The notes: a model not told the origin generated them from the sequence alone. Counted from the first letter of the stretch, positions 5,173 to 60,931 are shown. The stretch: 64,000 bases of DNA from Ylistrum balloti (GCF_031769215.1 NW_026782115.1:620001-684000), one strand, 5' to 3'. A program made the numbers and translations.

Positions 5173-6126
5173 ATGGAAACTTTACTGTCATCAGCTCCAT
5201 CAAACACCACTGCCACTGACAGAATTAACAGTGCGCTAGCGACACTGAGGAATGAAATGGTAAATTTTGTCTCTAGTTGTCATCTGTCTGTACAAACAGT
5301 ATTAAATAACCTCTGATGTAACATTAGAGACTGGAATAGTAAACTTTATTTAATTTTATTCTCATTCGAGTTTGACCAAAAAAATTAATCGATTCAAAGA
5401 AATATAACTTTGGACTTAAAGTTATACTCTACGAAAGCAAACTTTGAATTTAATTGGAAAAAGTAACATTATTTCGACTTTTATTTTAAGTTTTATTTTA
5501 TTGTCTTTCCAGGCTGACCTACGGCAACAAGATGTGATGTTAATGAAACAGCTCATCAACATTAATGACACTATCCAGAGTCTAGCTAAACGACGGCCAA
5601 GTTCACACAGACCACTGAAGAAAAAATTATCCTTTGTCAACGGACGAAGAGCATTTGTGAATAGTGATGAATCCATTCCCGAAAACACCTCACACATACA
5701 ACAAAAACGAATGACATGGACTTCCAGCAGTTCTTTTGGCAGTATTGGTGGGTACTAACCAAGATAAACCTTCAGTTATTATTTATAGAAATGAGCTCAG
5801 TTGAAAAAAAAGAACAATAACGTTATTTTGAAATGAAGAGAAGAAAACACAATGATTAAATACTTACATTGATATGTTTGATGTTTTTTTCAGATTCCTC
5901 CAGTTCTACTGAAGACATGGGTTTTATGGATTCTGACAGTGATGACAGTCTTTGTAGTTCAGATCAAACCCTAAGTGACTCATTATCCTCCGTAACGTCG
6001 AGATCCTTGTTCATCGCTAAAATATCAGAAACAGACGATCAATCGGATGAAGAAATTTTCAGAAGAAACATCAAATTATGGAAATTTTCTCAGTCAGAAA
6101 GCTTCGAACATTCCGTTGTGTCTTGA
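5173..6126 (+). CDS. g1: LURAP-domain protein, long 3-exon form, 184 aa (exons 5173-5259, 5513-5747, 5894-6126)
   Basis: METLLSSAPSNTTATDRINSALATLRNEM|ADLRQQDVMLMKQLININDTIQSL...FGSI|DSSSSTEDMGFMDSDSDD...EEIFRRNIKLWKFS...VVS*. GT-AG introns of phase 0 and phase 1 (second donor G|GTGGGT, inferred from the required phase). 555 nt in frame. Confidence 0.85.
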
Positions 6127-9100
6127 ACATAAATGGAAAGCTTCTGTGTATATTTCATCGTGTTATGATGCTATAATACGAGAGCCTGACACCTAACTCA
6201 TGCTCAGAATTTAATCCTGATATACTCAGTATCCATATTAAGGATTAACTCAGTGGCCTTCAAAGTCCCAAAGGCAACTCGAGGCTGTCAGAGATCCGCT
6301 TCCAGGATATCCAAGATCACTACCGAAGACAGTTGTATTGAACCAAAGTGCCATCACAGATAGGACGGAATCACAAGGTAGTCCTAACCAGACGTCACAG
6401 GACATTGCATATTATATGTAATAAAAAACATTGAGCTACAATCACTGCCAAAGTGAATATCATTCATTTTATCGTTAGATTGGATTATTGAGAACAATAT
6501 TTCTTTAACTGTAATATTGAAATAGAGACGGTCCAAAAGGACATGCAGAAGAAGATTAAGATTGTGATGTAGTAGTAATCTGTTGTATTATGGAGCTATG
6601 TGTGAGTGAAAGAAAGAGTCATTCCACTTAAAGACGTCAAAACGAGACATGTGCCATTATTGCTCATTGCTGCCAAGAGTGGGAGTGTTGGTACGAGAGA
6701 CAGGAACGTGACAGGAGATAAGTAGTGTGGGTTATAATGTTGATTCATACAGTCATACTGTTTATGTTAGAAAGTAAAACAAATGTTTGACATGTATTAT
6801 CGATCTGACGATAAGTATGAATGGACGGTATTTATCTGTTTGATAAGCATTATTTTGTCGATCATTTGTTATCGTATGCATGTGTTTATACCTTCAGAAG
6901 AATGTGTTTGAATGTATACGCCTAGATGTTTTTGAATGTTTAGAATGTTATCAAACCGAATGAGATCGGAACAAATAAAAAAAGTCTTAAATAAATGCCA
7001 AATGTCTTTGTTTGCTGTTTCTTCTATGAGCAATACATCATGTTATGTACCCGGAAATAATATAGGGTGATCTGAGTATTGTTAAAAAAAAGCCTATATA
7101 CGTAGGTCGATTTAAGTTCTGTAATTCTATTGTCTGAACTGAATGTCTGACAATATTTATTCGAATAACGTTGTGCAAATATGAAAGCATATATGCGTTT
7201 CTACTTTCACTCATACAACAGTAGAATAAGCAAGTAACGTGAGAAATAGAATATGTCACTATACACACATATGCAGATATGTATCATGAAGAAAAACAAA
7301 TTCTATGTAATATCAAGGAAAACATCAGAAACAATAACTAAGAAAAACATTATATACAAAAGCCCTATAGTTTTTAATACACTTTGATAATCTGTTTGTT
7401 TATACCAACAACTTTGAAGACAACCGGTAGGCGTAGGTGTAAACTGATTGTATATTTCAACTAAAATAGTGGACAATGCCATAACTCTTTATCTTTTAAA
7501 TGTGTCCCAGTATCGGTCAGTCGCAGCTTACATGCCGCAAAACTAATGTTATAATAAAAGTTCTTATAACACAACCAATAGAAGATCTGGGTGTGACGTT
7601 TTAACTACTTAGGTTAGCACTGGTAAGTTTCATATTGGTCATTTGTCTGATGAAGTTGACCATTCAATTATTTAAACGTTACACAAAAAATATATTTTAT
7701 TCTATATTAAAAATTAATTCAAAATAATAACAGCGATGACAACATCTTTTTATAGCTTGAACGTAATATGAAAATCGATCAATACCTGTTCACAAATTAA
7801 AGTCGTTAAGATGTATGTCTTCTTGTAATTTTCCAGTAAAGCTTACCATTGCAAAAGTTATTAGCTACCTCGAAAAATCACGTGACAGGCTCATGGAATT
7901 AACAATAAGAGTGAAACTCTTCTCCGATTCTAGAAGACGCCGAAAGTATATGTATATACACGATAGAAATCAACTGAGCATATATTTAAAATTTATAACT
8001 ACTTTACTACTGTACTACTAATGATGTTTACTATAAAATAGTTTGTCATTAACGAACATTTGTCTCGTTAAACGAATCACACTGGACATTGCCCGTACAT
8101 AATGCTACGTACTTACATATATATGAAAATACATTCTTACGTTCCCAAAAGTAAGTACTTTGTGCTTTTTAATTCGGAAAGATGAGACAGATACACACAT
8201 TAAACACTGTAAAAATATTTACAAGATTACATAACCCAATAACAAAGTCAATTAGACTGTAAATTCTGAGATAAATATAAGGATATCCTCCGTACTTCAA
8301 TGATGCGATATCAATGTTGATAAAGTAGAAATAACCGGACACGATTAATGAGATATCGTGTAGGGTGGTTCATTTTTCCTTTTAAGAGTCTTCAGGAGAC
8401 TATTTGAAGAAAAAAAACCAGAAAAAACGATATTAAAGATTTCCTATTTCGTCAGTTTAAACAGGAAAATGTTGATTACAAAAAAGAACCCGTGTTATTA
8501 TCTTTTATGTTTTATGACTTGGCCAGATTATGTTACTTTCCTATCATTCCTTAACCCGGACAATTGAAGTGAGGAATAGTGCACATACAATTTTGATTTA
8601 GTACACAACACACGATCATGCATGCTGCAAGGTTTATAAAATGCTAGATTTATTGTTGGAGTTTCAAATTACATATCTGGCTATTCTTATCCATAAACGG
8701 CGTCTAACATGTTGATATAACCTTTATCAAATCAAATGTAACGCAAAATACAACATTGATATAAATACTGACAGGAAACTTTTTTAGTGCACATTTTCTC
8801 TTACGAAGCAAAAAATTCATGAAATACACTGAATATTGAAATCAGATACCTTATTTTCATTAGCTACATTACCGACAGACGTAAGTAAATGCATTAGATG
8901 TCATTAAAATACACTTAAGAGATTTAGCTCTCCCAGTACCAGCCGATATATATCGGGTTTTTGACGTCAGTTATAATTACAATATGCCAAACCCCTAATT
9001 TAGCATTTTTATTCCATTTCGATATAAATTTGGATCTATCTATCAGGAAGCATTCATCACTAATTCACTTTACCTATTAATTTTATTTTGAAAAAAAGAA

Positions 9101-10702: not shown

Positions 10703-10704
<2 letters not shown>

Positions 10705-13911: not shown

Positions 13912-14644
13912 CTAAATATTCGGTTCTCTTCCACATATACTGTCGTCGCTATCGGAATCAGCACTACTCAAGTCTTCTTTACAGCTGGATACGTCTGAAA
14001 GGACACAGATTGCGAACTGTGAGACTAAGCATCCTATAAACTGAATTACATTACAAAAGAAAAAACAAATAATTACATTTATCCCCTTTCTTATATGATT
14101 TCACACCTTAGACAATTGATAGAATTGAGCAAAGGATATTTTTGAAAATGCAACATCCTAATTTACCTTCGATGCTGGACAGTGATCCACTCAAAGTAGT
14201 GTTCAAGCTGCAAATGGTCATGACATCTTGATCTTCCCGTTGTTTCATGAGTGAAATGTCCTCTTCTGGAATGGAGTCATTCCGATTGATGAATCTCCGT
14301 CGTCCTTTTAATAAATTTATTTTTTTCTTGAGAGATCCTCTTTGAACTGGCTTCCGTTTAGATAAGCTTTTGATGTTTTCGTTGATACACAATAGCTGTT
14401 TCATCAACTGTCCATCCTGTTGTCTGAGGTCTAGCTAAAATATAAGAGACAGAAAGGTAGCTAGAATTGAAAAAAGGGATGAAAAATGTGTTAACACGAA
14501 TCAGATCTAGTAATCAATATGATGAAAATAAAGGAATAATATACAAAAGGTGTTTACCATTTCACTTCTGAGTGTCGCAAGAGCATTGCTTATTCTTTCA
14601 GTTGAGGAACAAGTTGTTGAAGCTGCTGTCAGTAAAGAATCCAT
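13912..14644 (-). CDS. g2: LURAP-domain protein, short 3-exon form, 145 aa (exons 14644-14558, 14434-14167, 13994-13912)
   Basis: MDSLLTAASTTCSSTERISNALATLRSEM|LDLRQQDGQLMKQLLCINENIKSL...TLSGSLSSIE|DVSSCKEDLSSADSDSDDSICGREPNI*. Canonical GT-AG introns, phases 0 and 1. 438 nt. Confidence 0.88.
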
Positions 14645-17255: not shown

Positions 17256-17698
17256 CTACATGTCATTCTCGGTACTGCACAGACTATCATCGCTGTCTGA
17301 ACTGGAATCTTCTTCGGGAATAGATTCATTCAGATTGATGAATTTTCGTCGTCCTTTAACTAAGGAAAATTTCTTTTTCATTGGTCTGCCTGGGTTTGAT
17401 CTCCGTTTAGTCAATGACTTGATGCTATCATTGATGGACACAAGTTGCTTCATCAACTTGATATCTTGTTGTCTGAGGTCAAGCTGAAACGTAAAAAAAT
17501 CGTATGAAATTAAATAGTTCTTTCACTAACAGTTAGCTAATATTTTTAGAGTGAGTTATTGTGTAGTGTTTTCGTCAAAATATCATTTTTCTATGTATAT
17601 ATTATACATTATTAAGTAATACTTACCATTTCGCTCCTCAGTGTTGCCAAAGCATTATTAATCCTATCGCTTGATTTTTCTGTCATAACGGACTCCAT
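17256..17698 (-). CDS. g3: LURAP-domain protein, 2-exon form, 99 aa (exons 17698-17627, 17483-17256)
   Basis: MESVMTEKSSDRINNALATLRSEM|LDLRQQDIKLMKQLVSINDSIKSLTKRR...SIPEEDSSSDSDDSLCSTENDM*. Donor GTAAGT, acceptor TTTCAG. Confidence 0.9.
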
Positions 17699-17994: not shown

Positions 17995-20125
17995 GTTCTA
18001 GTTGATCCACACAGGAGGGGTTGGTCCTCCCGCAAAGTAATGAAAGAGAGTAACTACAACATTAAATCATTTTTTGTTTGTTCAGATGTACCACACGTCT
18101 GGAAATTGTGTTCTCACCTCTGGTACTTGACATCTACCACTTAACACACAATGTGCTGCTTTATCTCGCCATTGTATCCTACCAGTCTTTGATTAACCCA
18201 ACGGAGAGCAATTATTGTAAAGACCTACATGAGTTTCATCACGTTGTATGAACTCGAATTGCTGTCTATTAAATGTCAAAATAACTTATAAATAGTTTTA
18301 TTATATGATTCCCCTTGACCTACCTGGGACTTGCATTATTCGAAATGTTTATACAACAATAAAATAGTCAAAGTAAGGAAATTGACTTCAATCAAAACGA
18401 TTGTAAAAAAGACACACAAGAAAAAAACACCAGTTAATACCACTTAAGAGTTAGATACAGAAGAGCCAAACAATAATTAAACTGCATCATGCGGCTGTTT
18501 CGTCTTTCTAGGACTTGTAAGCGATGCTAAGGGTCTTCATTTTGAAGCCTTAGAGCCGAATGAAGAAAATTCAAATGGCTAAAAGAAATGTTAAAATGAA
18601 GATAGAGAGGTCACTTGCCCCAAATTCAATAAATTTCATAATTTTCGTATGTTTGATAATGTAAGAACATTATCGAGTATATGTGTATATTCTGAACCGT
18701 CACTATTCGAATGATTCAAAATTAAATGACGACAAATTGACTATGACAAAATTCATTTTTATATATTCATTTTTATAATAATTATAATGATATTATTAGT
18801 CAAGAGCAGATAATGATTTAACCATACAAATTCACTTTTAAAACTCAATTTACTTAAAATTTAAAGTTGCATAAAGAAATTGATTAACATGATTATTTAT
18901 AAAAAATATATTATGTGCTGAAAGAACAGATATACGTTTTGTATATAAAAGGATAGTGATTTATTACATATTAACCAAAGCAATGCAAGATTCAAAATCC
19001 TCGTGTAGAAGATCAGAATGATGTAATTTGATCCAAAATTAATTAGCCCTAATATAGTCATCTGTTGCCGGAATATTTCGGTAGCACACCGCTACTAAGG
19101 GGGTCGGCTGTCGGCCAAAATAAACGCCCGAATATCAATCATTATACTTAATCAATACAGTATCATATTTCTAAGTAGAAGACATCATGCTGAGGTAATC
19201 TTTAAAACAAATATTTTGAATCATTATATATCAATACTATTGCAGATCGAAAGCAATGGTCAAAGCCAGCGTGTACAATGAATTCATGAAGAAAAATTAT
19301 TGATATCAATTTTCGATAACCATAGCTAAAATAAACTGACATTTTCAAATCTAACCATAGATTTATACATTTGGATTATGCTGACTTGTGTCTTGCATCT
19401 GGAAAGTGGTAATGCCAAATGAAAATAACAGAACTTTTGAAACAACGTTACCGCGGTATTGTTCAGTCATATATATGCATGCGTTTACAATGGATTGTTT
19501 CGATTCTGCAAATGATCACGTTTTTGAAATAACGAGTTAGATATTTCACAAGATCAGAGTGTTTCCAAGGTTAAAGCTATTTATGTTTCTTAGTTATATG
19601 ATCACAACAAAAATCAATTCTGTCTTATTTTTACTTGCATTTTCTTACTGCAGTAATCATGTAGTAATTTTGTCTGTTTTGGATACTTCTAAAAATAAAA
19701 CATTTACAGATGATATCAATATCATATAAAGCACCCTTTGATTACGCAGTTGCTGTGTTGACAGCCATTTCAGAAAATTTTTCCATTAACTTCGGTCGAC
19801 CTTTCAATTTTCCGCATCAGCGAGAATTTTTGCATTCCGTTGATTGGTGGGTTATTGATATCGATGTGTTGTTGACAAGCAATACTTAGTTATGTTAATG
19901 CATCGATAACAATAAAGACATGTCATGAATTAGTGTAGAATGGATGTTGGTGGTCAAACGATGGGGGTTGTATCAAGAAACTTTGTCATTCTTCGTTATA
20001 AACAAAGGCGACCAGGGTGGTGGAGACGAATTCTCCGTGTTGGTATCAAACCCCTGTTGGTATTAGATTAGGTGTATCTCACACATGGTTCTTAAATTGG
20101 TCTTAAATATAACAATAGTTAAACC

Positions 20126-20352
20126 TTATCAGACACCATCAAAACAGTTAATGTGCAAGGAATATGAATAAATTAACATTACATAGCATAGTCTACCTAC
20201 GCCAGGTGTAACTGATCTGTCTCTGTTGGTATTTGGCTTATACAGCAGGTGCTTTGTATTTCAGAATATTAAACCACACACCGATTTTATTTAGACCACA
20301 TCAGATTGGAATTCTGGTATAAATATGAGTCAAAACAAAAATCCGATCAGTT
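20126..20352 (+). promoter_or_regulatory. g4 promoter
   Basis: TTATCAGACACCATCAA 20126-20142, CAGGTGTAACTGAT 20203-20216, CAGGTG 20246, TATAAATA 20318-20325, TCAGTT 20347-20352. Confidence 0.7.
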
Positions 20353-20416
20353 CTTTAACAGACACTGATCTACTAGTATCAAAGATTTACCATACCTTTT
20401 ACAAACAAGAATTAGA

Positions 20417-20946
20417 ATGGAATCTGTACAGAAACCGTCCAACAGCACTGCTACTGAGAGGATTAACAGTGCCTTAGCTACACTCAGGAGCGATATGGTA
20501 ATTATTGTATAATTCATATTCCTAATCATTATCTTATTCTAAATTTGGCAACATCATCACAATATATTCAGCCTTGGCTACAATCCAGAGTGATATGGTA
20601 ATTATTATATAATTCCTATTTTTAAAAAATCATTATTGTTTCTGTTATTCGAGATTAGAGCATCTTTGATTTTGTTTTGTTTCTAAAATTAATCGAATTC
20701 GTACTTTTATCGTTACAGCTTGACCTCAGACAACAAGATATCCAGCTGATGCAGCAGCTTATGTCGATCAACGAAAACATACAGACGCTGACCAAACGAA
20801 GGCCTAACTCTGGAAGGCAACGAAAAACGAAATACACGATTAACAGACGACAAAAATTCATCAACCGAAGTGAATCGATTCCAGAAGAGGATTCTAGTTC
20901 GGCAGACTCTGACAGTGATGAAAGCCTGACCGGTATTGAAAATTAG
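20417..20946 (+). CDS. g4: LURAP-domain protein, 2-exon form, 102 aa (exons 20417-20497, 20719-20946)
   Basis: MESVQKPSNSTATERINSALATLRSDM|LDLRQQDIQLMQQLMSINENIQTLTKRR...SIPEEDSSSADSDSDESLTGIEN*. Confidence 0.88.
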
Positions 20947-23469
20947 TTAGGCACCTGACTTGCTGAGCTCTTAATCTCTCCAAAAAGAACTTTGTTATGC
21001 GAAAATTCAATCATCACCACCAGTTTCAAGATTTTACAATAGACTTATTCTTCCCTTGCTGGACAAAGGATATAACGTAATTTGGAAATGGAATTCGGGA
21101 ATATGATTAAGCGCGATTAGATATTCTGTGAGGAAACATTACTTAATTGAACATTTCAAAGAAATAGTTTTCCCGATGATGTGGACATTGTCTTTAACTT
21201 ACTCAATGGAATACGTACAGAACAGACTCTCTCCAATTGCAATGACAAACTGAGACAGAACTATAGTTCTATGACACTTGCTCAAATCTGCCATATATGT
21301 ATATCACTGTGTTCAGGTTGTGAAAAGATTAACATGTGTATGTATGTTGGAAAGTATGGTCTTTCAAATGTTAGTATGGCAGGTAGTGACACAATCCATT
21401 GTTGACGAATGTGATCATACTTCACACGCACAAAAAGCAACTCATGTCACGGCACATGTCTGCATGTGATTTTTTTCAAGAAGTGGATGAAACTTTGATA
21501 GACTATGATTTTGTATTATAGAGTCGTGTGTAAAGAACATGTAGCTTTATATTAGTACAAATGTGAAATCCGGAAAGAACAAGAAAATTCTTTCTAATTT
21601 TCAAGTGTTTAAAGAATGGCTGTGAGAAGATGTGTATAGGAATGTTTGTGTAGGGACAAAAGCAATATTTACTTTTACATTGTTACAAATATAATTAAAA
21701 TGAAAATGAATCGATTTTTTTCTTGTTTTTTGTTTTCTCTTTTTTTTATCGTGATTATCGCAGTTGGGCTGGTCATGAACAGAGAAAATCATTTCGACAT
21801 AGCTTGATAAGTAAAGAATGCGAATTACAACATCTGTGTTGTTATTTGATTCCGACAATACTGAATCTATTCTTGATAATTTCTACTCAAATAAGTTGAG
21901 TTTGATATAGCCTAAAACAGTTTTCAGAAATCGTAACATTTTACACGCACTAGGGCAGAAATAAATACAACCAAAAATTAGCTAATATATCGCGAAGTTA
22001 GTTAACTGGGATCTTTCATTAATCCATGCATTATTTTGTAGACAAAACATATAATAAGAACATTGCATTGAAAGGTACTATGCATTTGTGTAACTCTTAA
22101 ATACGGACCATGTTTAAAACGTCGTACACAAATTATATTATATATTCACTAATTCAACAAACACAATTATAGGAAATATACTAGGAAATATATTTGAATC
22201 ACCGACAGAGCAAGAAGCTTACAGACTATCAACAGTGTAGGAATTTGATGGTTTGTAGTATGAATGTTTTCAAAATAGTTTATGTAATTTGTAATATTAT
22301 GCACTTCAATGTTTTTTTTTTTTTTTTTTTTTACAACTGTTTCAATATAACACGCCATATTTGTATATAAATAACAAACAAATAGTAACGACAATATGCG
22401 GACTTTCACTGCTATGTTGTGGCAAGGAATTCATACCGAAATCTTTGTAATCTATTTCCTGTCCTGTAAGTTCTAAATGCGTCATTCATTTCACGGTTAG
22501 GAGGCGTCAAAACAGACGAGGTAGGGGATAAGATATCAATTACTGTAAGAATGGAGTAATATAGATACCTTATCAAACAACGTCTAAACAACAGACATGT
22601 AGCATTAATAATACATTGTCAGTACATTATATAGTTTCAACTTGTGCTAAATGTAATTGATATCTTCCAGGAGGTTCTTTGGTTAAGCAGCAGGTGCTTT
22701 TTATATGCAAATAATACCAACAATGTTTCGTTGCCTCTCTTGTCAATAACTTCAATTCATACCAGGTATCGTAAGGGAGGGATGTTTGATTTTATAATCG
22801 TTAATATTGATTATGTGTGTGAGGGAGATTTTTCTAAGTACCTGAAATAAACATCAATGAGATATAGTACGTTGTGTTCTTCTCTAGTTCATACACAGGG
22901 TTTTCAAATCACAAGCTCCTTATACGCACAATAAACATTATCAACGGTAACGGAAAAAACTCAACGGAGACAACAAGAAAATTTGATGACAGAATCAATC
23001 ATAAATAATGAGAGAGATACAATTTATAACTACAAAATATACTAACATTTCAGAATGTGAATGCATGCAGAATGCAGAAAGTTAAACTTACTAACCAGAC
23101 CACCAGGTGGTCGTTATTTCTAATGCTGTGCATGAAAACTTCAATCAAAATAATTTGTATTTCTTACTACAATCAAATAGGAGGTCTTGTCTATTTTAGC
23201 ATTTCTAGTTTTAGGTTAGCATATACTATTGCGCATTTTATTGAGTATTACTTAACGGCAATGCTAAATTTGCGTATGTATGTAGTGACCAAGAATATCT
23301 ATTATTTTCGGGGTGATCTGTTTTAAAACATGCTAAAAAAAACACGCATTTTATTCATTCATTCTGTTCAGAGAAAAAAATGCATGTTTCCTATAACATC
23401 GTATGTTGATTGCGATCAGCATTTTTGAGAATATAGCAATTACTGTAAAATTGCAATAATATTGGTGTC

Positions 23470-23673
23470 TTATCAAACACCATCTAAACAATAGATATTC
23501 AAAATAAGCTATCAAGCTTTGTCATTATATGATTAACAGTCAGCATATGCCATATGTAACTGATATCTCACCGGAGGTACTTGGCAGACATTAAACCACA
23601 CGCAATGTTACGTAGTCCTCATAGGGACGGCAGATATGTATAAATACTTAAGAAAACAAAATCCTGATCAGTT
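23470..23673 (+). promoter_or_regulatory. g5 promoter (type P1)
   Basis: TTATCAAACACCATCTA 23470-23486, TGTAACTGAT 23555-23564, TATAAATA 23639-23646, TCAGTT 23668-23673. Confidence 0.7.
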
Positions 23674-23738
23674 CTCAGACAGACACTGATCTTCTTGTAT
23701 CGAGGATCGATCATATATCATATAAACCAATTATAAGA

Positions 23739-24176
23739 ATGGAAACTGTACCGACAGCATCCAACAGTGCTGCTACTGACAGGATCAACAGTGCCCTGGC
23801 TACACTCCGGAGTGATATGGTAATTTTTATATAATTCCTATTTTTTTAAAATCATTATTGTTTCTGTTATTCGAGACTAGAGCATCTTTGATTTTGTTTT
23901 TGTTTTTTCTTTCTAAAATTAATCGAATTCGTACTTTTATCGTTACAGCTTGACCTCAGACAACAAGATGTCCAGCTGATGCAGCAGCTTATGTCGATCA
24001 ACGAAAACATACAGACGCTGACCAAACGAAGGCCTTACTCTGGAAGGCAACGAAAAACGAAATGCATGATTAACGGAAGACGAAAATTTATCAACCGAAG
24101 TGAATTGATTCCGGAAGAAGAATCGAGTTCGGCAGACTCTGACAGTGATGAAAGCCTGACCGGTATTGAAAATTAA
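23739..24176 (+). CDS. g5: LURAP-domain protein, 2-exon form, 102 aa (exons 23739-23819, 23949-24176)
   Basis: METVPTASNSAATDRINSALATLRSDM|LDLRQQDVQLMQQLMSINENIQTL...GIEN*. GT-AG intron, phase 0. Confidence 0.9.
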
Positions 24177-26681
24177 TTCATTTGGTTTAATAGAACAGTT
24201 TACGACTTGTTGAACTCTCAACGAATATGATTATAACAAAGAAAAGAAAAAAACATTTAACGATCATCGAATCACCAATAGTAGTCCCACAACCTCATGA
24301 TTCTTCCCTTGCTGGACAAAGGATATAACGTAATTTGGAAATGGAATTCGGGAATATGATTAAGCGCGATTTGATATTCTGTGAGGAAACATTACTTAAT
24401 TGAATATTTCAAAGAAATAATTTTCCTGATGATCTGGACATTGTATTTAACTTATTCAATGGAATACGTACAAAACAGACTCTTTCCAATTGGAATGACA
24501 AACTGAGACAGAACTATAGTTCTATGACACTTGCTCAAATCTGCCATATATGTATATCACTGTATTCAGGTTGTGAAAAGATTAACATGTGTATGTATGT
24601 TGGAAAGTATGGTCTTTCAAATGTTAGTATGGCAGGAAGTGACACAATCCATTGTTGACGAATGTGATCATACTTCACACGCACAAAAAGCAACTCATGT
24701 CACGGCACATGTCTGCATGTGATTTTTTTTCAAGAAGTGGATGAAACTTTGATAGACTATGATTTTGTATTATAGAGTCGAGTGTAAAGAACCTGTAGCT
24801 TTATATTAGTACAAATGTGAAATCCGGAAAGAACAAGAAAATTCTTTCTAATTTTCAAGTGTTGAAAGAATGGCTGTGAGAAGATATGTATAGGAATGTT
24901 TGTGTAGGGACAAGAGCAATATTTACTTTTACATTGTTACAAATATAATTAAAATAAAAATGAATCGATTTTTTTCTTGTTTTTTGTTTTCTCTTTCTTT
25001 TTATCATGATTATCGCAATTGGGCTGGTCATGAACAGAAAATCATTTCGACATAGCTTGATAAGTAAAGAATGCAAATTGCAACATCTGTGTTGTTATTT
25101 GATTCCATCAATCGTGAATCCATTCTTAAGAATTTCTACTCAAATAAGTTGAGTTTGATATAGCCTAAAACAGTTTTCAGAAATCGTAACATTTTACATG
25201 CACTAAGGCAGAAATAAATATAACCAAAAATTAGCTAATATATTGCGAAGTTAGTTAACTGGGATCTTTCATTAATCCATGCATTATTTTGTAGACAAAA
25301 ATCAAATAAGAACATTGCATTGAAAGGTACTGTGCATTTGTGTAACTCTTAAATACGGACCATATTTAAAACGTCGTACACAAATTATATTATATATTCA
25401 CTAATTCAATAAACACAATTATAGGAAATATACTAGGAATTATATTTGGATCACCGACAGAGCAAGAAGCTTACAGACTATCAACAGTGTAGGAATTTGA
25501 TGGTTTGTAGTATGAATGTTTTCAAAATAGTTTATGTAATTTGTAATATTATGCACTTCAATGTTTTTTGTTTTACAACTGTTTCAATATAACACACCAT
25601 ATTTGTATATAAATAATAAACAAATAGTAACGACAATATGCGGACTTCACTGCTATGTTGTGGCAAGGAATTCATGTCGAAATCTATGTAATCTATTTCC
25701 TGTCCTGTAAGTTCTAAATGCGTCATTCATTTCACGGTTAGGAGGCGTCAAAACAGACGAGGTAGGGGATAAGATATCAATTACTGTAAGAATGGATTAA
25801 TATAGATACCTTATCAAACACGGTGTAAACAACAAACATGTAACATTAATAATACATTGTCAGTACATGATATAGTTTCAACTTGTGCCAAATGTAATTG
25901 ATATCTTCCAGGAGGTTCTTTGGTTAAGCAGCGGGTGCTTTTTATATGCAAATATACCAGCAATCTTTCGTTGCCTCTCATGTCAATAACTTCAATTCAT
26001 ACCAGGTATCGTAAGGGAGGGATGTTTGATTTTATAATCGTTAATATTGATTATGTGTGTGAGGGAGATTTTAGAAATGTACCTGAAATAAACATCAATG
26101 AGATATAGTACGTTGTGTTCTTCTCTAGTTCATACACATGGTTTCCAAATCTCAAGCTCCTTATACGCACAATAAACATTATTAACGGTAACGGAAAAAA
26201 CTCAACGGAGACAACAAGAAAATTTGATCACATAATCAATCATAAATAATGAGACAGATACAATTTATAACTACAAGATATACTAACATTTCAGAATGTG
26301 AATGCATGCAGAATGCAGAAAGTTAAACTTACTAACCAGACCACCAGGTGGTCGTTATTTCTAATGCTGTGCGTGAAAACTTCAATCAAAATAATTTGTA
26401 TTTCTTACTACAATAAAATAGGAGGTCTTGCCTATTTAGTTTTAGTTTTAGATAACAGCATATACTATTTCGCATTTTATTGATAATGCTAAATTTGCGT
26501 ATGTATGTAGTGACCAAGAATATATTTATTATTGATCTGTGTTAAATATAAAAGCACGCATTTTATTCATTCATTCTGTTCAGAAAAAACATGTTTCCTA
26601 TAACATCGTATATTGAAAGCGATAGCAGCATAATTTTTGAAAATATAGCAATTACTGTAAAATTGCAGTAATATTGGTGTC

Positions 26682-26907
26682 TTATCAAACACCATCTAAA
26701 CAAAAGATATTCAAAATAAGCTATCAAGCTTTGTCATTATATGATTACTGTCAGCATATGCCATATGTAACTGATATCTCACCGGAGGTACTTGGCTAAT
26801 ATAACAAGTTCTTTATGCAAGATATTAAACCACCTGCAATGTTACGTAGGCCTTATAGGGGTGAAAGACAGGTATAAATACTTGTGATAACAAAGCCCTG
26901 ATCAGTT
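26682..26907 (+). promoter_or_regulatory. g6 promoter (type P2)
   Basis: TTATCAAACACCATCTA 26682-26698, TATAAATA 26873-26880, TCAGTT 26902-26907. Confidence 0.7.
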
Positions 26908-26972
26908 CTCAGACAGACACTGCTCATCTTGTATCGAGGATTTATTATATATCATATAAACCAATTATAGGA

Positions 26973-27402
26973 ATGGAAACCGTACCGACAGCATCCAACA
27001 GTAGTGCTACTGACAGGATCAACAGTGCCCTGGCTACACTCCGGAGTGATATGGTAATTTTTAAATAATTCCTATTTTTTTAAAATCATTATTGTTTCTG
27101 TTATTTGAGATTAGAACATCTTTGATTTTGTTTTGTTTCTAAAATTAATCGAATTCGTACTTTTATCGTTACAGCTTGACCTCAGACAACAAGATGTCCA
27201 GCTTTTGCAGCAGCTTATGTCGATCAACGAAAACATACAGACGCTGACCAAACGAAGGCCTAACTCTGGAAGGCAACGAAAAACGAAATACATGATTAAC
27301 GGACGACGAAAATTCATCCACCGAAGTGAATCGATTCCGGAAGAAGAATCAAGTTCGGCAGACTCTGACAGTGATGAAAGCCTGACCGGTATTGAAAATT
27401 AA
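26973..27402 (+). CDS. g6: LURAP-domain protein, 2-exon form, 102 aa (exons 26973-27053, 27175-27402)
   Basis: METVPTASNSSATDRINSALATLRSDM|LDLRQQDVQLLQQLMSINENIQTL...GIEN*. Confidence 0.9.
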
Positions 27403-29921: not shown

Positions 29922-30125
29922 TGATCAAACACCATCTAAACAATTAATATTCAAAATAAGCTATCAAGCTTTGTCATTATATGATTAACAGTCAGCATAT
30001 GCCATATGTAACTGATATCTCACCGGAGGTACTTGGCAGATATTAAACCACACGCAATGTTACGTAGCCCTCATAGGGAAGGCAGATATGTATAAATACT
30101 TAAGAAACCTAAATCCTGATCAGTT
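29922..30125 (+). promoter_or_regulatory. g7 promoter (type P1)
   Basis: TGATCAAACACCATCTA 29922-29938, TATAAATA 30091-30098, TCAGTT 30120-30125. Confidence 0.7.
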
Positions 30126-30190
30126 CTCAGACAGACACTGATCATCTTGTATCGAGGATTTATTATATATCATACAAACCAATTATAAGA

Positions 30191-30622
30191 ATGGAAACCG
30201 TACCGACAACATCCAACAGTACTGCTACTGACAGGATCAACAGTGCCCTGGCTACACTCCGGAGTGATATGGTAATTATTATTTAGATGTTTTTTCCATT
30301 AATTCTCTGTTTCTCCGTTATTTCGTATCTAAACTATTGGATATTTTTATTGATGTTTCTAAAATTAATCGATCTTTTACTTTAATTGTTACAGCTCGAC
30401 CTCAGACAACAAGATGTCCAGCTGATGCAGCAGCTTATGTCGATCAACGAAAACATACAGACGCTGACCAAACGAAGGCCTAACTCTGGAAGGCAACGAA
30501 AAACGAAATACACGATTAAAGGACGACGAAAATTCATCAACCGAAGTGAATCTATTCCAGAAGAAGAATCGAGTTCGGCAGACTCTGACAGTGATGAAAG
30601 TCTGACCGGTATTGAAAATTAA
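30191..30622 (+). CDS. g7: LURAP-domain protein, 2-exon form, 102 aa (exons 30191-30271, 30395-30622)
   Basis: METVPTTSNSTATDRINSALATLRSDM|LDLRQQDVQLMQQLMSINENIQTL...GIEN*. Its intron is diverged from those of g5, g6, g8 and g9. Confidence 0.9.
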
Positions 30623-33146: not shown

Positions 33147-33211
33147 CTCAGACAGACACTGCTCATCTTGTATCGAGGATTTATTATATATCATACAAAC
33201 CAATTATAAGA

Positions 33212-33369: not shown

Positions 33370-33401
<32 letters not shown>

Positions 33402-35715: not shown

Positions 35716-35919
35716 TGATCAAACACCATCTAAACAATTAATATTCAAAATAAGTTATCAAGCTTTGTCATTATATGATTAACAGTCAGCATATGCCATA
35801 TGTAACTGATATCTCACCGGAGGTACTTGGCAGACATTAAACCACACGCAATGTTACGTAGCCCTCATAGGGAAGGCAGATATGTATAAATACTTAGGAA
35901 AACTAAATCCTGATCAGTC
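35716..35919 (+). promoter_or_regulatory. g9 promoter (type P1)
   Basis: TGATCAAACACCATCTA 35716-35732, TATAAATA 35885-35892, TCAGTC 35914-35919. Confidence 0.68.
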
Positions 35920-35984
35920 CTCAAACAGACACTGATCTTCTTGTATCGAGGATTGATCATATATCATATAAACCAATTATAGGA

Positions 35985-36415
35985 ATGGAAACCGTACCGA
36001 CAGCATCCAACAGTAGTGCTACTGACAGGATCAACAGTGCCCTGGCTACACTCAGGAGTGATATGGTAATTATTAAATAATTCTTATTTTTTTAAAAATC
36101 ATTATTGTTTCTGTAATTTGAGATTAGAGCATTTTTGATTTTGTTTTGTTTCTAAAATTAATCGAATTCGTACTTTTATCGTTACAGCTTGACCTCAGAC
36201 AACAAGATGTCCAGCTGATGCAGCAGCTTATGTCGATCAATGAAAACATACAGACGCTGACCAAACGAAGGCCTTACTCTGGAAGGCAACGAAAAACGAA
36301 ATACACGATTAACGGACGACGAAAATTCATCAACCGAAGTGAATCGATTCCAGAAGAAGAATCGAGTTCAGCAGACTCTGACAGTGATGAAAGCCTGACT
36401 GGTATTGAAAATTAA
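35985..36415 (+). CDS. g9: LURAP-domain protein, 2-exon form, 102 aa (exons 35985-36065, 36188-36415)
   Basis: METVPTASNSSATDRINSALATLRSDM|LDLRQQDVQLMQQLMS...GIEN*. Confidence 0.9.
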
Positions 36416-39040
36416 TTCATTTGGTTCAATAGAACAGTTTACGACTTGTTGGACTCTCAACGAATAGTATCATGACTCAGAAAAAGAAACATTTTTACGA
36501 TCAACGTATCACCAACACTAGTCTCACAACCTCGTGGTTCTTCCCTTGCTGGACAAGGATTAATTATGGTTTAGAAATAAACATACTGACAGGTTTTTAT
36601 GAAGAGGATTCGGCGTTGAAATATTGATAAACATCGAAAGTTTGTTACCAATGATATATCAATTTCTTCAATCGAAGCAAAAACACTTTTCAAACTTATT
36701 CGTTGTTTCCATTACGTTACAAGGAGACACCGTTTGTCAATTAAATGACATTCGCCTAATACTGCCAGACATTTCTTTCAATGTGTTCACAGGGCATAGA
36801 TGTGTATGAAAGTTGGAACATTTGCGTAACGTCTATATGAAGTGTTTGATAAGAAAATACACGCAGTAGTTACATATTTGAGTGATGAGGAGAGTAAATA
36901 ATTCTTCATATCAATGTATATCTTTGATAAAAATGGCATTGTATAATCGTATGGAAATTAATTGTCTAATGTTATAATCAATGTGTAAGTGGAATGCAGA
37001 AGTAGAACATAATTTATAAACTTAATTCTAGTCTAAAAGATTAAAGTCAACAAATGAGCACAAAAGCGAAAGTGAAGGGAATGTTGCAATACCTATATAC
37101 ATTGTTACAAATTTAAATAAAAATTTAAGGAACCTTTATATTCTTGTGTTTTTATTGTACGCATGATTATCGAACTGTTTGCTGATCAATGGCGACTGAA
37201 GAAAACGAAAGAAAACCATTTTTTTATTTCAATACTTATAATCCAGAATATCCTTCAACACTTCCCATTATTAATGTTTATTTCAACCAGTTGGTTCTAG
37301 CTGTTTGTATCTTATATATTCAAAATTCTTCAGTTGAGACATTTGTCCCATTTGAGAGATATAATGAGGATATATTGATGGAAGTTTATACTCAGTATTT
37401 TATTTTGTAGTAGCTAATCATCGATAGTGTGCATAATAAATATTTGATTTGTTCGAACCTAAATTAGATAGATTTGATGCAGGCTTGACGTACAACATGT
37501 CTCACAAAATACACGCACATTATAACTTCACTAGCATTGCAATAACTATTGAATATTTAAACTAATAGTCAACTTATAGGGCACCATATGTCAACAGATA
37601 TTTCTTATATTATCATTCTCGCTGACCTTTGTGTCATTACAGTTTCCATTTTAAAACAACCTTTATATTACTATATCAATCATTGTAGGGGTAATTCACG
37701 ACAGTGCTTGACTTTCGCTGGTAGTGGCATCCACTTTATGTTGATATATTTGGGTTATCGTTGACTGCCGTATAAGAAACATGAATTTTATGTATTTCAT
37801 GGTGTCCAATGTAAAAACATAGGGAGCGGGGGATCTTATCAATAACTGTAATATTGCAGTGATACTTTATCAAACACAATCTACACAATAGACATGTAAA
37901 AATAGTAACTCATTGTCAGTTAATCATAAACAGGCAACCCATTCCACATGTAATTGATCTCTACCCGGAGTCAAGTTTCGCAAGATATAAACTACCCGCA
38001 ACGTAAAGTTCCATCATACAATAACTGCGAAATTAAAACTTCTAAGAAATTACTGCAAAATAACGACAGGAAACATTATCACTCCTCGGGAAAAAAACAA
38101 AAACGGTACCATTTCGTTTTCGATCGCAACATCATTACATGTAGAATATGACGTCAGCATTTTCGGAATAATCTTTCTCGTTTTCTAACAAAGATTACTT
38201 TCCGATTTTCTTTTTTGAGCTTAAAAATGTAGGATAAAGAACATTGAAGTTAGATGTCAATTTTGTTCAAACAATGTCTGTTTAGTTCTAACTTTGCATA
38301 TATCATAATTGTGGAATGTAAACGACGATTATTGGAAAACACTTATCCATATATCTTTAAATATTAATCATGAAAAAAATGTAATGTACGAATTTGAACT
38401 ATTATTACATTTTTATCACTGGCCATTTAAATATAATGAGTATCTAAAATGTTTAAATATCTAAACCATGGGCTTCTATTAAATACATAGATTACATATA
38501 TTTTTTGTCAGATAGCTTTCAGATGCATATATAAACATTCTACATTGTTAGCCAGAAACAACTAAATGTGTAACAAAATTGCCTATACAAACCTAAACTT
38601 AATGAAAGGAATCTCATAAATCATTTTGATAGTCATGGTGCGTCAGGCATACATATCTGTTACTTGTATCTCGTTTAAAGCACATTACTAACTTTATTTC
38701 AAATTACAAATAACATTTGACCGAAGCACAGCAATTTTATTCATATTGCAAATAATATTAATAACGTCATTACGTAAACCAAAAAGCAAAAGAATGCTAA
38801 TTGACTAATATCTCATAATTCTTGCAATTACACACATTATAACGGAAAATAAATTGTCATCTTAATAGAAGTACTGTAAAGGGATCCACGAAATTGTACC
38901 CCAGAACAAGTACAAGGTAACCAGTACCAAGTAGCACTGGTATTTCCTTCTGTCATGTCACGGATATTTCATTTCTTTAATTCCAGGTGTCTTGGTCTAT
39001 GCAGGAGAACCTACTGAATAAGGTTGGAATCCTGCGTTAG

Positions 39041-39285: not shown

Positions 39286-39990
39286 ATGGAATCTGCTCAC
39301 ACAACATCCAAAACCAGCGTTTCTGACAGGATAAATGGTGCCCTGGCCACTCTCAGGAGTGAAATGGTAATTAACTTGATCGTAATGATCATCGTAATCA
39401 TCATATATTGAATAATGCAATTCGATTGTTGGGTTTAATTTTTTCCCAAATTTCAAATCCATTTATTTCCCTTTGGAAATATATATCACTCACTCGTAAT
39501 CTGAAACAGCATCTTAATTTATTACCTTTGGTATTTACAGCTTGACCTCAGACAACAAGATGTTCAGTTGATGAAGCAGCTCATGTGTATCAATGATAAC
39601 ATCCAGACGCTATCAAAAAGAAGGAGCTCTAACACACCATTAAGGAAGAAGCTGGCTCTGGTCAATGGTAGAATGATTTTCGTAAATGTCGATGAGTTCA
39701 CCACTAAAAGACAAAACCGAAGTTCCCTGTCCCGAACTCTTACTGGATCTGTGTCCAGCATTGAAGGTAATTATTCAAGATTCATTAAAATTCATGTGCT
39801 AGTGCTATTTCAGAAGTTGAAATTGTCGTACCTGAAAAATTTTTTTTTGGAGTTAATATCATCACGGCAAGAATATATATAACATATTTATTTTGCTATT
39901 GTTTCAGAAACCTCAAGCTCCACAGAAGACCTCAGTTCATTGGATTCGGATAGTGATGACAGTTTGTGTGGAACCATGCATAACCATTAG
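39286..39990 (+). CDS. g10: LURAP-domain protein, short 3-exon form, 129 aa (exons 39286-39366, 39541-39766, 39908-39990)
   Basis: MESAHTTSKTSVSDRINGALATLRSEM|LDLRQQDVQLMKQLMCINDNIQTL...TLTGSVSSIE|ETSSSTEDLSSLDSDSDDSLCGTMHNH*. GT-AG introns, phases 0 and 1. Confidence 0.9.
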
Positions 39991-59952: not shown

Positions 59953-60012
59953 TTATCGAGACAGCGAACTGTAAACTTGGCTATCCGTGATTGTATTCCT
60001 TAACATACTAAC

Positions 60013-60931
60013 ATGACGTCCGTGGTGATATCAGCATCCGTCAGCGACAGAATCAATGAAGCGCTGGCAACGCTAAAAACAGAAATGGTATGTATTAATT
60101 TTTATATATTGTAGAGTTTTTTTGTGAAATCTTTTTAAACATATAGTGTTTACATAAGTTTCCAATTTTTTTTTTTTTTTTTTTTTGTCGTTCGTAAATT
60201 TTGTATTACATCCATATAGAAATATCATTAATCAATGTTTCTCTTTTATAATCAAGGTGAATTTGAGACAACAAGATGTCCACTTGATGAAGCAGTTGAT
60301 TGGTATAAACGATACTATACAGAAACTATCCAAACAGCGACCCGGTTCACATAGTCCACATAAGGAGAAATTCACGATACCAAACGGACGACGAACGTTC
60401 GTAAACAAGACTGAATCCATCCCTGAAGAGACCCCCCTTGTCCGCCAACAAAGTGTTCCTAACTACTGTACAATGAACGGCAGCCTCAACGGATCTCTCT
60501 CCAGCATTGAAGGTAATTCAAATTAATAACTCTAATTGACACGAAGTCATCTTAAATAACTTAAATTTTAATTTTTGATTTTAATTTTAAATTTTTATTT
60601 AGTTTTAATGAAAAGTGAATTTGATCTACTAATTAAGTGTGCAAGAATGATAAAAACAAATGAATTCTAATGAACCTATTTTAACATATATTGTATCTCC
60701 CTTTCAGATGTCTGCAGTTCTCTGGAAGACCTAAGTGCAGCTGAATCAGATAGTGATGACAATTTGTTTGGTTCCGATCAAAACCTTAGCGAGTCTTTCT
60801 CGTCCACCACCTCCAGGTCACGATCAGTAGCGAACACTTCAAAGGAATCTGACCTAGACTATTGTTCTTACGAGCAAATCCTGAGAAGAAACATTAAGTT
60901 GTGGAAATTCTCTCGGACGCAACAACATTGA
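60013..60931 (+). CDS. g12: LURAP-domain protein, long 3-exon form, 184 aa (exons 60013-60087, 60257-60512, 60708-60931)
   Basis: MTSVVISASVSDRINEALATLKTEM|VNLRQQDVHLMKQLIGINDTIQKL...SLNGSLSSIE|DVCSSLEDLSAAESDSDD...YEQILRRNIKLWKFSRTQQH*. GT-AG introns, phases 0 and 1. 555 nt. Confidence 0.88.

What the first reader, a model, noticed from the sequence alone, without database searches (positions are those of the whole stretch)
5173..60931. A 12-gene cluster of spliced LURAP/LRAP-domain mini-genes hidden from the ORF track
Seen in the sequence: twelve intact genes, with no stops or frameshifts after splicing and the same phase-0 intron after the (E/D)M codons; they are both old (g1, g2, g3, g10, g11, g12) and recent (g4-g9). 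Established knowledge, recalled: the helix LRxEMxxLRxxDVxLMxQLxxINxxI is the LURAP domain (Pfam LURAP) of LURAP1/LRAP35a, LURAP1L and FAM89/LRAP25, which act as MRCK (CDC42BP) kinase adaptors and NF-kB modulators; vertebrates have only a few dispersed copies. Inference: this is a lineage-specific, co-regulated (TATA+Inr, shared upstream and 3'-UTR elements) family of small adaptor or dominant-negative proteins. I know of no description of such a cluster, but could not search.
Basis: partly seen in the sequence, partly recalled or inferred. Interest (0 to 1): 0.85.

Follow-up and report, generated by a model that had tools for sequence, protein, structure and literature searches.

The report
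Scallop tandem cluster of LURAP-helix genes
The window holds twelve intact, tandemly arranged small genes of a scallop, all carrying the helix that in vertebrate LURAP1, LRAP25 and DIORA1 binds the cytoskeletal kinase MRCK. The genes are real, conserved and already annotated as 'uncharacterized', but their function is untested.

Summary
The window is Ylistrum balloti JAUZWB010000167.1:620001-684000. It carries 12 intact spliced paralogues, all with a GT-AG phase-0 intron after the (E/D)M codon. Five of them (g1, g2, g10, g11, g12) also have a phase-1 intron and a third exon.

Spliced proteins pass Pfam LURAP (25-41 bits, cut-off 25). No FAM167 hit appeared.

All 12 genes are already called in the public annotation as uncharacterized proteins. 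No paper on them was found.

The cluster is not specific to this species. It is collinear in Mizuhopecten, and orthologues exist in Pecten and Argopecten. Only the six 102-aa copies g4-g9 are a Ylistrum-specific amplification (3.2-kb units, dN/dS 0.1-0.7, mostly below 0.4).

The genes are not LURAP1 orthologues. They belong to a subfamily found here only in molluscs: an N-terminal helix, a disordered Ser/acidic linker and a C-terminal YEEILRRNIxLWK helix. Only g1 and g12 keep the C-terminal helix.

The helix keeps the R/K-x-E/D-x7-D spacing reported as essential for DIORA1 binding to the MRCK KIM region. Binding to MRCK is inferred, not shown.

A shared promoter is supported (TATA, TCAGT initiator, upstream ACGT element). 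Shared 3'-UTR elements are not. No RNA run was available.

The parts
5173..6126 (+). g1, long form, 184 aa. Exons 5173-5259, 5513-5747, 5894-6126. Keeps the C-terminal EEIFRRNIKLWKFS helix.
   Evidence: Model. Identical to P0087, LOC132549754. Pfam LURAP 25.1 bits.
13912..14644 (-). g2, 145 aa. Exons 14644-14558, 14434-14167, 13994-13912.
   Evidence: A called gene of 145 aa has the same coordinates. Its orthologue is Mizuhopecten P0011.
17256..17698 (-). g3, 99 aa, two exons: 17698-17627, 17483-17256.
   Evidence: A called gene of 99 aa has the same coordinates and a LURAP hit on record. Exon 2 alone scores 20.2 bits.
20417..20946 (+). g4, 102 aa. Exons 20417-20497, 20719-20946. The oldest of the young group.
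   Evidence: The public model is 136 aa with a different 5' end.
23739..24176 (+). g5, 102 aa. Exons 23739-23819, 23949-24176.
   Evidence: Contained in P0003, LOC132549677. LURAP 38.4 bits.
26973..27402 (+). g6, 102 aa. Exons 26973-27053, 27175-27402.
   Evidence: Contained in P0002, LOC132549678. LURAP 40.6 bits.
30191..30622 (+). g7, 102 aa. Exons 30191-30271, 30395-30622.
   Evidence: The called gene (143-aa model) ends at the same stop and has a LURAP hit on record.
33212..33673 (+). g8, 102 aa. Exons 33212-33292, 33446-33673.
   Evidence: The called gene (108 aa) ends at the same stop and has a LURAP hit on record.
35985..36415 (+). g9, 102 aa. Exons 35985-36065, 36188-36415.
   Evidence: Contained in P0001, LOC132549681. 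LURAP 39.5 bits.
39286..39990 (+). g10, mid form, 129 aa. Exons 39286-39366, 39541-39766, 39908-39990.
   Evidence: Identical to P0015, LOC132549748.
47932..48705 (+). g11, mid form, 130 aa. Exons 47932-48009, 48209-48437, 48620-48705.
   Evidence: Identical to P0017. LURAP 31.2 bits.
60013..60931 (+). g12, long form, 184 aa. Exons 60013-60087, 60257-60512, 60708-60931. The copy most like the out-group mollusc proteins. Keeps PLVRQQSVP, RSRSV and EQILRRNIKLWKFS.
   Evidence: Identical to P0090, LOC132549684. Best window match of all out-group proteins. AlphaFold model: helix 2-52, disordered 53-159, helix 160-182.
20125..36674 (+). Tandem array of 2.8-3.3-kb units that carries g4-g9.
   Evidence: Self-BLAST: the longest unit-to-unit alignments are about 92% identical over whole units (shorter ones 70-93%), against 95-98% for the CDS of g5-g9. 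A Ylistrum-only clade with support 97/93.

Best explanation
Shown. This is a real, conserved tandem family of twelve nuclear genes of the scallop Ylistrum balloti. A thirteenth, divergent member lies 16.7 kb upstream of the window. The genes encode small intracellular proteins of the Pfam LURAP family. They belong to a subfamily found here only in molluscs. Its full-length form (g1, g12; 184 aa) is an N-terminal amphipathic helix of about 50 residues, a disordered Ser/acidic linker with basophilic phosphosite-like motifs (PLVRQQSxP, RxRSxS), and a short C-terminal helix YEEILRRNIxLWK. The other copies are progressively shortened. g2, g10 and g11 lack the C-terminal helix. g3-g9 also lack intron 2 and about 26-39 codons. 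They keep only the helix, a basic patch and an acidic DSDSD(E/D)S tail. g4-g9 were amplified in the Ylistrum lineage and have since evolved under purifying selection. All copies share one promoter layout.

Inferred. The N-terminal helix works as in LURAP1/LRAP35a, FAM89B/LRAP25 and FAM167A/DIORA1. It docks on the coiled-coil kinase-inhibitory-motif (KIM) region of the scallop MRCK (CDC42BP/Gek) kinase and so tunes actomyosin contractility. The long forms would bring a second partner through the C-terminal helix. The helix-only mini-proteins would occupy the same site without that partner, as stand-alone modulators or competitors.
For: Gene reality:
- Twelve intact GT-AG models.
- Seven models are identical to or contained in public proteins, and all 12 loci are called.
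- Orthologues exist in Mizuhopecten, Pecten and Argopecten, with conserved order and strand in Mizuhopecten.
- dN/dS is 0.10-0.71 among g4-g9, and 0.38 or less in 14 of 15 pairs, with dS 0.03-0.23.
- The CDS is better conserved than the rest of the repeat unit.
- In a second individual, all indels listed within g10 lie in its introns.

Family:
- LURAP scores of 25-41 bits against a cut-off of 25.
- The nearest Atlas clusters are LURAP-domain clusters of molluscs and chordates.
- The phase-0 intron after ...(E)M sits at the same place in the Haliotis 'LURAP1-like' gene. Both introns are conserved in Mytilus.

Architecture: alignment A2 and the AlphaFold model, with helices 2-52 (block means 94-97 over residues 11-50) and 160-182 and the rest disordered.

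Mechanism lead:
- LURAP1 and LRAP25 bind the MRCK KIM through this helix. R124, E126 and D134 of DIORA1 are required for KIM binding (PMC12519202; PMC5677176; PMC3940853).
- The same n, n+2, n+10 spacing is R/K-x-E/D-x7-D in all 12 copies. The Asp is invariant across the mollusc family.

Co-regulation: TATA, TCAGT and an upstream ACGT element.
Against: - There is no expression or junction evidence from reads. The only public run holding the stretch is DNA.
- No binding test of any kind was possible.
- The Pfam match covers only model positions 4-52 of 118. What is shared with vertebrate proteins is one amphipathic helix, which could bind other coiled coils.
- No copy has the C-terminal PDZ-binding motif through which LURAP1 recruits MYO18A or Dishevelled.
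- The register of the R/E/D triad against human DIORA1 was inferred from spacing and from a fish FAM167A-like protein (P0066). It was not read from the paper's alignment.
- The presence and KIM conservation of scallop MRCK was not checked here.
Confidence: 0.6

Rival explanations
1. MicroProtein model. The helix mainly mediates homo- or hetero-dimerisation within the family. The minis (g3-g9) and mid forms would act by pairing with the long paralogues (g1, g12, the 213-aa neighbour) and blocking whatever those do. They would not bind a kinase themselves.
For: The helix is a leucine-repeat amphipathic helix of about 50 residues. Truncated and full-length paralogues share one promoter layout, so they could be co-expressed. 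The truncation series keeps the helix and loses the effector-like C-terminal helix.
Against: No evidence for self-association was obtained. In vertebrates the homologous helix is documented as a KIM binder. The polar triad needed for KIM binding is conserved beyond what a simple dimer interface requires.
Confidence: 0.2
2. The helix has been re-used for a partner unrelated to MRCK. The subfamily has its own C-terminal helix and phosphosite-like motifs, so the family name says little about function in molluscs.
For: Only positions 4-52 of the Pfam model match. Molluscs keep a separate LURAP1-like gene and a FAM89-like gene that could cover the ancestral MRCK role. The C-terminal YEEILRRNIxLWK helix is invariant at N, W and K. 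It appeared only in mollusc-named proteins among the hits that carry names.
Against: The triad spacing and the invariant Asp are kept. The profile of the scallop proteins retrieves LURAP1-like, FAM89-like and FAM167A-like proteins through this helix alone.
Confidence: 0.15
3. The six young copies are neutral, recently duplicated DNA on the way to becoming pseudogenes, or an assembly artefact of fewer real copies.
For: They sit in a 3.2-kb tandem repeat whose units are about 92% identical over the longest alignments. No RNA evidence was available.
Against: All six are intact. dN/dS is 0.10-0.38 in 14 of 15 pairs at dS up to 0.23. The CDS is more conserved than the rest of the unit. The copies differ by 2-9%, so they are not collapsed duplicates. 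In another individual the g9 exon region shows word depth of 28-45 against about 10.5 in the flanks, consistent with several copies. Mizuhopecten has three such minis by tblastn.
Confidence: 0.04
4. The proteins are FAM167/DIORA-type rather than LURAP-type.
For: FAM167A shares the same KIM-binding helix. A fish FAM167A-like protein is retrieved weakly by the scallop profile.
Against: No PF11652 hit appeared at E<=1 for any spliced protein, while LURAP passes its cut-off. FAM167 clusters rank far lower in the Atlas search (0.77-0.79 against 0.90-0.94).
Confidence: 0.03

Closest known systems
LURAP1 / LRAP35a (vertebrates)
   Same: Pfam LURAP helix with leucine repeats and the R-x-E...D spacing. 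A small, largely disordered protein. The mollusc LURAP1-like gene has the phase-0 intron at the same place in the helix.
   Different: Not orthologous, because molluscs have their own LURAP1-like gene. No C-terminal PDZ-binding motif. A different C-terminal helix (YEEILRRNIxLWK). Present as a 12-13 gene tandem array with truncated forms.
FAM89B / LRAP25 and FAM89A
   Same: Same Pfam family and similar size (about 180-190 aa for the long forms). The helix is reported to bind the MRCK KIM.
   Different: A separate FAM89-like protein exists in molluscs (P0058). It has the ...LRxLDMSLxCQL... signature that the scallop copies lack.
FAM167A / DIORA1
   Same: KIM-binding helix with essential R124, E126 and D134 (PMC12519202). 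The same n, n+2, n+10 pattern is seen here.
   Different: A different Pfam family (PF11652), which is not hit. DIORA1 also binds the C1-PH and CNH modules through other regions, and those have no counterpart here.
Mollusc 'uncharacterized' LURAP-domain proteins (Mytilus, Crassostrea, Dreissena, Mactra, Solemya, Patella, Batillaria, Nucella, Lymnaea, Physella)
   Same: Same subfamily: N-terminal helix, PLVRQQSxP, acidic Ser-rich stretch, RxRSxS and the C-terminal YEEILRRNIxLWK. Both intron positions are conserved in Mytilus. Consecutive locus numbers in Mytilus and Crassostrea suggest neighbouring copies.
   Different: The scallop array has more copies and a graded truncation series. The six 102-aa copies are specific to Ylistrum.
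MicroProteins (Id and LITTLE ZIPPER type single-domain competitors)
   Same: Paralogue-derived proteins of about 100 aa that keep only the interaction helix of a longer family.
   Different: Analogy only. No competition or dimerisation has been shown here.

Membership tests
Pfam LURAP (PF14854) | Whole-protein score at or above the gathering cut-off of 25 bits | tested here: met
   g9, g6 and g5 (P0001-3) score 38.4-40.6. g11 scores 31.2. g1 scores 25.1, which is marginal. Scallop orthologues score 29-34. g12, g3, g7 and g8 have a LURAP hit on record. g2 and g10 have a faint one, and the g4 model has none.
Pfam LURAP (PF14854) | Match over the whole 118-position model | tested here: not met
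   Only positions 4-52, sometimes to 55, are matched. The second half of the model has no counterpart.
LURAP1 / LRAP35a proper | [quoted passage not shown] | tested here: not met
   The C-termini are ...SVVS (g1)...TQQH (g12)...GIEN (g4-g9)...ENDM (g3)...EPNI (g2)...MHNH (g10) and ...YNHS (g11). The motif is as described in PMC5677176.
LURAP1 / LRAP35a proper | Orthology to vertebrate LURAP1/LURAP1L | tested here: not met
   A distinct mollusc gene named 'leucine rich adaptor protein 1-like' (Haliotis P0065, with bivalve relatives P0059 and P0071) has its own signature. The signature is IELSNACRQFY upstream and SFDSGIHE downstream of the helix.
MRCK KIM-binding helix proteins (LURAP1, LRAP25, DIORA1) | Polar triad R, E, D at n, n+2, n+10 on the helix | tested here: met
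   The sequence is L(R/K)x(E/D)Mx(D/N)LRQQD in all 12 copies. The Asp is invariant in 26 mollusc proteins. The register against human DIORA1 was inferred from spacing only.
MRCK KIM-binding helix proteins (LURAP1, LRAP25, DIORA1) | Physical binding to the MRCK coiled-coil/KIM region | not testable with these tools
   No complex prediction or experiment was available.
LURAP gene structure | Phase-0 intron inside the helix after ...L(R)xEM | tested here: met
   The junction is the same in all 12 copies, in the Haliotis LURAP1-like gene (IDKAMETLRAEM|gtaagg) and at the equivalent place in Mytilus P0055.
FAM167 (PF11652) | Profile hit | tested here: not met
   No hit at E<=1 or at E<=10 for exon 2 alone.

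The most novel reading that the evidence does not exclude
Molluscs evolved their own branch of MRCK-docking proteins. In scallops this branch diversified into a co-regulated array running from full-length two-helix forms to helix-only proteins of about 100 aa. The minis would be natural, genetically encoded decoys or activators for the MRCK KIM site. Their dosage (six copies in Ylistrum, a long-distance swimming scallop) would tune actomyosin contractility in a particular tissue or stage.
Probability: 0.25. Interest if true: 0.6.

Novelty: new variant of a known kind. Interest (0 to 1): 0.35.

Why it matters
How KIM-binding proteins regulate MRCK kinases is still debated (release of autoinhibition versus a 'molecular ruler', PMC12519202). 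A natural series of paralogues that keeps the docking helix and strips away everything else would be a ready-made dissection of that module. It would also show that the LURAP, FAM89 and FAM167 helix is an old metazoan device with lineage-specific elaborations.

For mollusc genomics the practical gain is modest. A dozen 'uncharacterized LOC' genes per scallop genome get a family, an architecture, an orthology map and a testable function. Nothing here overturns current knowledge.

Tried and rejected
- RNA evidence. The single run-finder call returned one run with no record of being RNA. Laying it showed a 5.4-kb contig across intergenic DNA, so it is DNA of another individual. It showed no joints and gives no junction evidence.
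- 3'-UTR elements. No 8-mer is shared by 5 or more of 8 independent 3' flanks of 450 nt. One 7-mer (TGTGTTC) occurs in 6 of 8 and was not tested further. Canonical poly(A) signals are mostly absent within 450 nt, so the UTRs are probably longer.
- A 13th copy inside the window. tblastn with the divergent neighbour P0064 and with out-group proteins found only the 12 known copies.
- Literature. 'lurap' with 'mollus' gave no paper, and six scallop locus names gave none. One badly framed query returned only general bivalve papers.
- Resolving the order of duplications. The proteins are too short, and 21 of 32 inner branches are unresolved. The out-group was not monophyletic and had long branches, so I make no claim about which scallop subfamily is oldest from the tree. 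The statement that g12 is most like out-group proteins rests on tblastn scores.
- tRNA scan: none found.
- Fold search was not run, because the model is two isolated helices and would give meaningless matches.
- Spliced proteins without a stored id (g2, g3, g4, g7, g8) were not typed into Pfam. For them I rely on exon-2 scores and precomputed hits of the called genes.
Full report
**What is in the sequence.** The six-frame ORF list already shows twelve related reading frames containing ...LRQQDVxLMKQLxxINxxIQxL.... A pattern scan found twelve matching upstream mini-exons. Each ends ...ALATL(R/K)x(E/D)M and is followed directly by GTAA or GTAT. The scan also found one partial duplicate of such an exon end inside the first intron of g4. 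Scripted gene models gave the same structure for every copy:
- an ATG exon of 24-29 codons;
- an intron of 121-253 nt with a pyrimidine tract and AG, in phase 0;
- a second exon beginning (L/A/I/V)(D/N)LRQQD.

Reading the DNA downstream showed a second donor in g1, g2, g10, g11 and g12. It lies after ...SSIE-G|GTAA (g1...GSI-G|GTGGGT), in phase 1, and leads to a third exon that encodes an acidic, Ser-rich DSDSDDS motif. The final proteins are 184 aa (g1), 145 (g2), 99 (g3), 102 (g4-g9), 129 (g10), 130 (g11) and 184 (g12). None has a stop or frameshift.

**Where the window comes from, and independent support for the models.** Protein searches identified the genome as the scallop Ylistrum balloti. 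Contig look-ups place the window at JAUZWB010000167.1:620001-684000.
- My models of g1, g10, g11 and g12 are letter-for-letter identical to public proteins P0087, P0015, P0017 and P0090.
- g5, g6 and g9 are contained in P0003, P0002 and P0001, which add short N-terminal extensions.
- The called genes at g2 (145 aa) and g3 (99 aa) have my coordinates.
- g4, g7 and g8 are called with different 5' ends.

So all twelve genes are already annotated as 'uncharacterized protein LOC...'. They are hidden only from a prokaryote-style ORF list.

**Family assignment.** Exon 2 alone gives sub-threshold Pfam LURAP hits of 15-20 bits at model positions 29-52. With exon 1 spliced on, the proteins pass the 25-bit cut-off:
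- 38.4-40.6 bits for g5, g6 and g9;
- 31.2 bits for g11;
- 25.1 bits for g1, which is marginal;
- 29-34 bits for orthologues in other scallops.

No FAM167 hit appeared at E<=1. An Atlas search shows that family is still a separate Pfam entry and ranks it well below LURAP clusters. Only the first half of the LURAP model (positions 4-52) is matched, which corresponds to the leucine-repeat helix.

**Conservation and age.** Mizuhopecten yessoensis carries a collinear cluster on one scaffold (LOC110447665-675), with the same order and strands. In window orientation the called genes are:
- a 184-aa g1 orthologue;
- a 141-aa g2 orthologue on the opposite strand;
- a 101-aa g3-like gene on the opposite strand;
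- 103-aa minis;
- 129- and 130-aa mid forms.

The g12 orthologue (P0089, LOC110447665) lies on the same scaffold, but its position was not looked up. tblastn finds further uncalled copies, about eleven in all, including three minis. Pecten maximus and Argopecten irradians have orthologues of the long, mid and mini forms.

In a maximum-likelihood tree the g1 clade, the g2 clade and the g10/g11 clade each unite several genera. g4-g9 form a Ylistrum-only clade (97/93), and the two Mizuhopecten minis in the tree pair with each other. Most deeper forks are unresolved. I left the divergent P0064 out of that tree.

g4-g9 sit in units of 2.8-3.3 kb (20125-36674). The longest unit-to-unit alignments are about 92% identical, while the coding sequences of g5-g9 are 95-98% identical. 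Nei-Gojobori estimates give dS 0.03-0.23 and dN/dS 0.10-0.71, with 14 of 15 pairs at or below 0.38. The young copies have therefore been under purifying selection since they arose.

Contigs of a second individual show about 1.5% divergence. All indels listed within g10 lie in its introns. Word depth over the g9 exons is raised, as expected for a multi-copy unit.

**The wider family.** A profile of the scallop proteins searched against 1.84 billion representatives found 58 proteins. Those that carry names are bivalves (Mytilus, Crassostrea, Dreissena, Mactra, Solemya) and gastropods (Patella, Batillaria, Nucella, Lymnaea, Physella). Their alignment (A2) defines a common architecture:
- the N-terminal helix, with invariant Q, D and I;
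- PL(V)RQQS(V/E)P;
- an acidic Ser-rich stretch;
- R(P/S)RS(L/V)S;
- a C-terminal Y(E)EIL(R/K)RN(I/V)xLWK, with invariant N, W and K.

Only g1 and g12 keep the C-terminal motif, and only g12 keeps all five elements. g12 is also the best window match of every out-group protein. An AlphaFold model of g12 built on that alignment gives a confident helix at 2-52 (block means 94-97 over residues 11-50), a second helix at 160-182 (80-92), and disorder between them.

The same profile also retrieved, through the helix alone, a separate mollusc gene that NCBI names 'leucine rich adaptor protein 1-like' (Haliotis), a FAM89-like protein (Nucella) and a fish FAM167A-like protein. The cluster genes are therefore a distinct branch of the family, seen so far only in molluscs, and not counterparts of LURAP1.

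Gene structure supports common descent. The Haliotis LURAP1-like gene has its intron exactly after ...TLRAEM. Mytilus P0055 has both scallop intron positions. A thirteenth, divergent member (P0064, 213 aa, a 9-kb gene on the opposite strand) lies 16.7 kb upstream of the window.

**Origin of the short forms.** At codon level the two-exon genes read ...CCA GAA GA(G/A) GA(T/A) TC(T/G) AGT.... The three-exon g2 has ...CCA GAA GAG GAC... in exon 2 and ...GAA GAC TTG AGT... in exon 3. This fits an in-frame deletion between two Glu-Asp codon pairs that removed intron 2. An earlier first-stage note (s1-262948) proposed the same. I checked it only on these sequences.

**Promoters.** All twelve genes have TATAAATA or TATATAAA 84-117 nt before the ATG. 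Eight have TCAGT 29-32 nt after the TATA start, and g11 and g12 have TCATT there. An ACGT-core element (CACGTG, CACGTA, TTACGTAG or TGACGT) lies within 45 nt upstream of the TATA in 6 of 8 independent lineages. A random 45-nt stretch of this DNA holds ACGT with probability 0.11, giving a binomial P of about 5e-5. Six Mizuhopecten orthologues show the same TATA position. Five of them have GATCAGTTCT after the TATA, and five have an ACGT-core element upstream (CCACGT in four). This supports shared regulation, by inference.

Shared 3'-UTR elements were not found. The public models of g4-g9 start in small exons 450-1200 nt further upstream that splice to two bases before the ATG (for example 35322-35337 for g9). 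Whether that reflects a second promoter or read-through from the preceding unit cannot be decided without reads.

**How it most likely works.**
- Established by others: LURAP1/LRAP35a binds MRCK through its leucine repeats and MYO18A or Dishevelled through a C-terminal PDZ-binding motif. It activates and targets the kinase (PMC5677176; PMC3940853). LURAP1, LRAP25 and DIORA1 all bind the MRCK KIM region through the homologous helix. R124, E126 and D134 of DIORA1 are required for that binding (PMC12519202).
- Shown here: the scallop helix keeps R/K, E/D and D at n, n+2 and n+10. The Asp is invariant in the mollusc family.
- Inferred: the scallop proteins dock on the MRCK coiled coil. Long forms add a second interaction through the C-terminal helix. 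Mid and mini forms occupy the site without it.
- Against simple transfer of function: none of the twelve ends in a PDZ-binding motif, only half of the Pfam model is matched, and no binding or expression data could be obtained.

**Comparison, novelty and verdict.** It is wrong or unproven about lineage specificity of the whole cluster, about equivalence to LURAP1 and about 3'-UTR elements.

The finding is a new variant of a known kind: an unstudied branch of the LURAP helix family, seen here only in molluscs, arranged in scallops as a conserved tandem array with a truncation series and a species-specific amplification. No publication was found in the searched library. That library does not cover most subscription journals. 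Interest is moderate.

Noticed in passing
Outside the window: JAUZWB010000167.1:594349-603324 (locus L004:10001-18976): A thirteenth, divergent family member (P0064, LOC132549751, 213 aa). It has both the helix and the C-terminal ...NMLMKNIQLWKFS motif and is spread over about 9 kb on the opposite strand, 16.7 kb before the window start.
   Followed up: partly
window 20498-20600: Intron 1 of g4 holds a duplicate of about 100 bp of the end of exon 1 with its donor (...SALATIQSDM|GTAATT at 20597). Reading through from the first donor hits a stop after four codons, so only the first donor gives the full protein.
   Followed up: partly
window 19961, 22551, 26486, 29540, 33010, 35322 (starts of the public CDS models of g4-g9): The public gene models of the young copies begin in tiny upstream exons 450-1200 nt before the ATG used here. 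They splice to two bases before it (read for g9: 35322-35337, acceptor at 35982/35983). This could be an alternative promoter, read-through from the preceding unit, or a model artefact.
   Followed up: partly
window 12624-13213: A minisatellite of 41-bp period and about 14 copies with strong GC skew. It produces long His/Gln/Pro/Thr-rich ORFs on the minus strand (12484-13313) that look like a by-product of the repeat, not a gene.
   Followed up: no
window 61472-61769, 4244-4555, 42951-43033: Further tandem repeats with periods of 23 bp (13 copies), 48-52 bp (4-6 copies) and a T-rich simple repeat.
   Followed up: no
window 39300 and 39320 (g10 exon 1): A second individual (run X1) differs at two exonic sites of g10. 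By my reading of the codons both are non-synonymous (H5Q and V12A), and both fall in the variable N-terminal stretch before the helix. All indels listed within g10 lie in its introns.
   Followed up: partly
L001:7167-7540; L002:1374-1764 and 6816-7259; L003:3326-3823 (Mizuhopecten yessoensis): tblastn finds family copies in the Mizuhopecten cluster that no called gene in those loci covers. That species' cluster therefore has about eleven members, not the seven annotated ones seen here.
   Followed up: partly
Mytilus and Crassostrea proteins (P0019, P0033, P0049, P0055, P0048/P0093): Consecutive locus or protein numbers in Mytilus (for example LOC143048214, 217 and 219) and Crassostrea virginica (LOC111105349 and 350) suggest that the same subfamily is tandemly duplicated there too. 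Short forms of 75-129 aa (two of them named Mytilus) were also retrieved.
   Followed up: no
window 63623-63755: A run of 133 N, left as it is.
   Followed up: no
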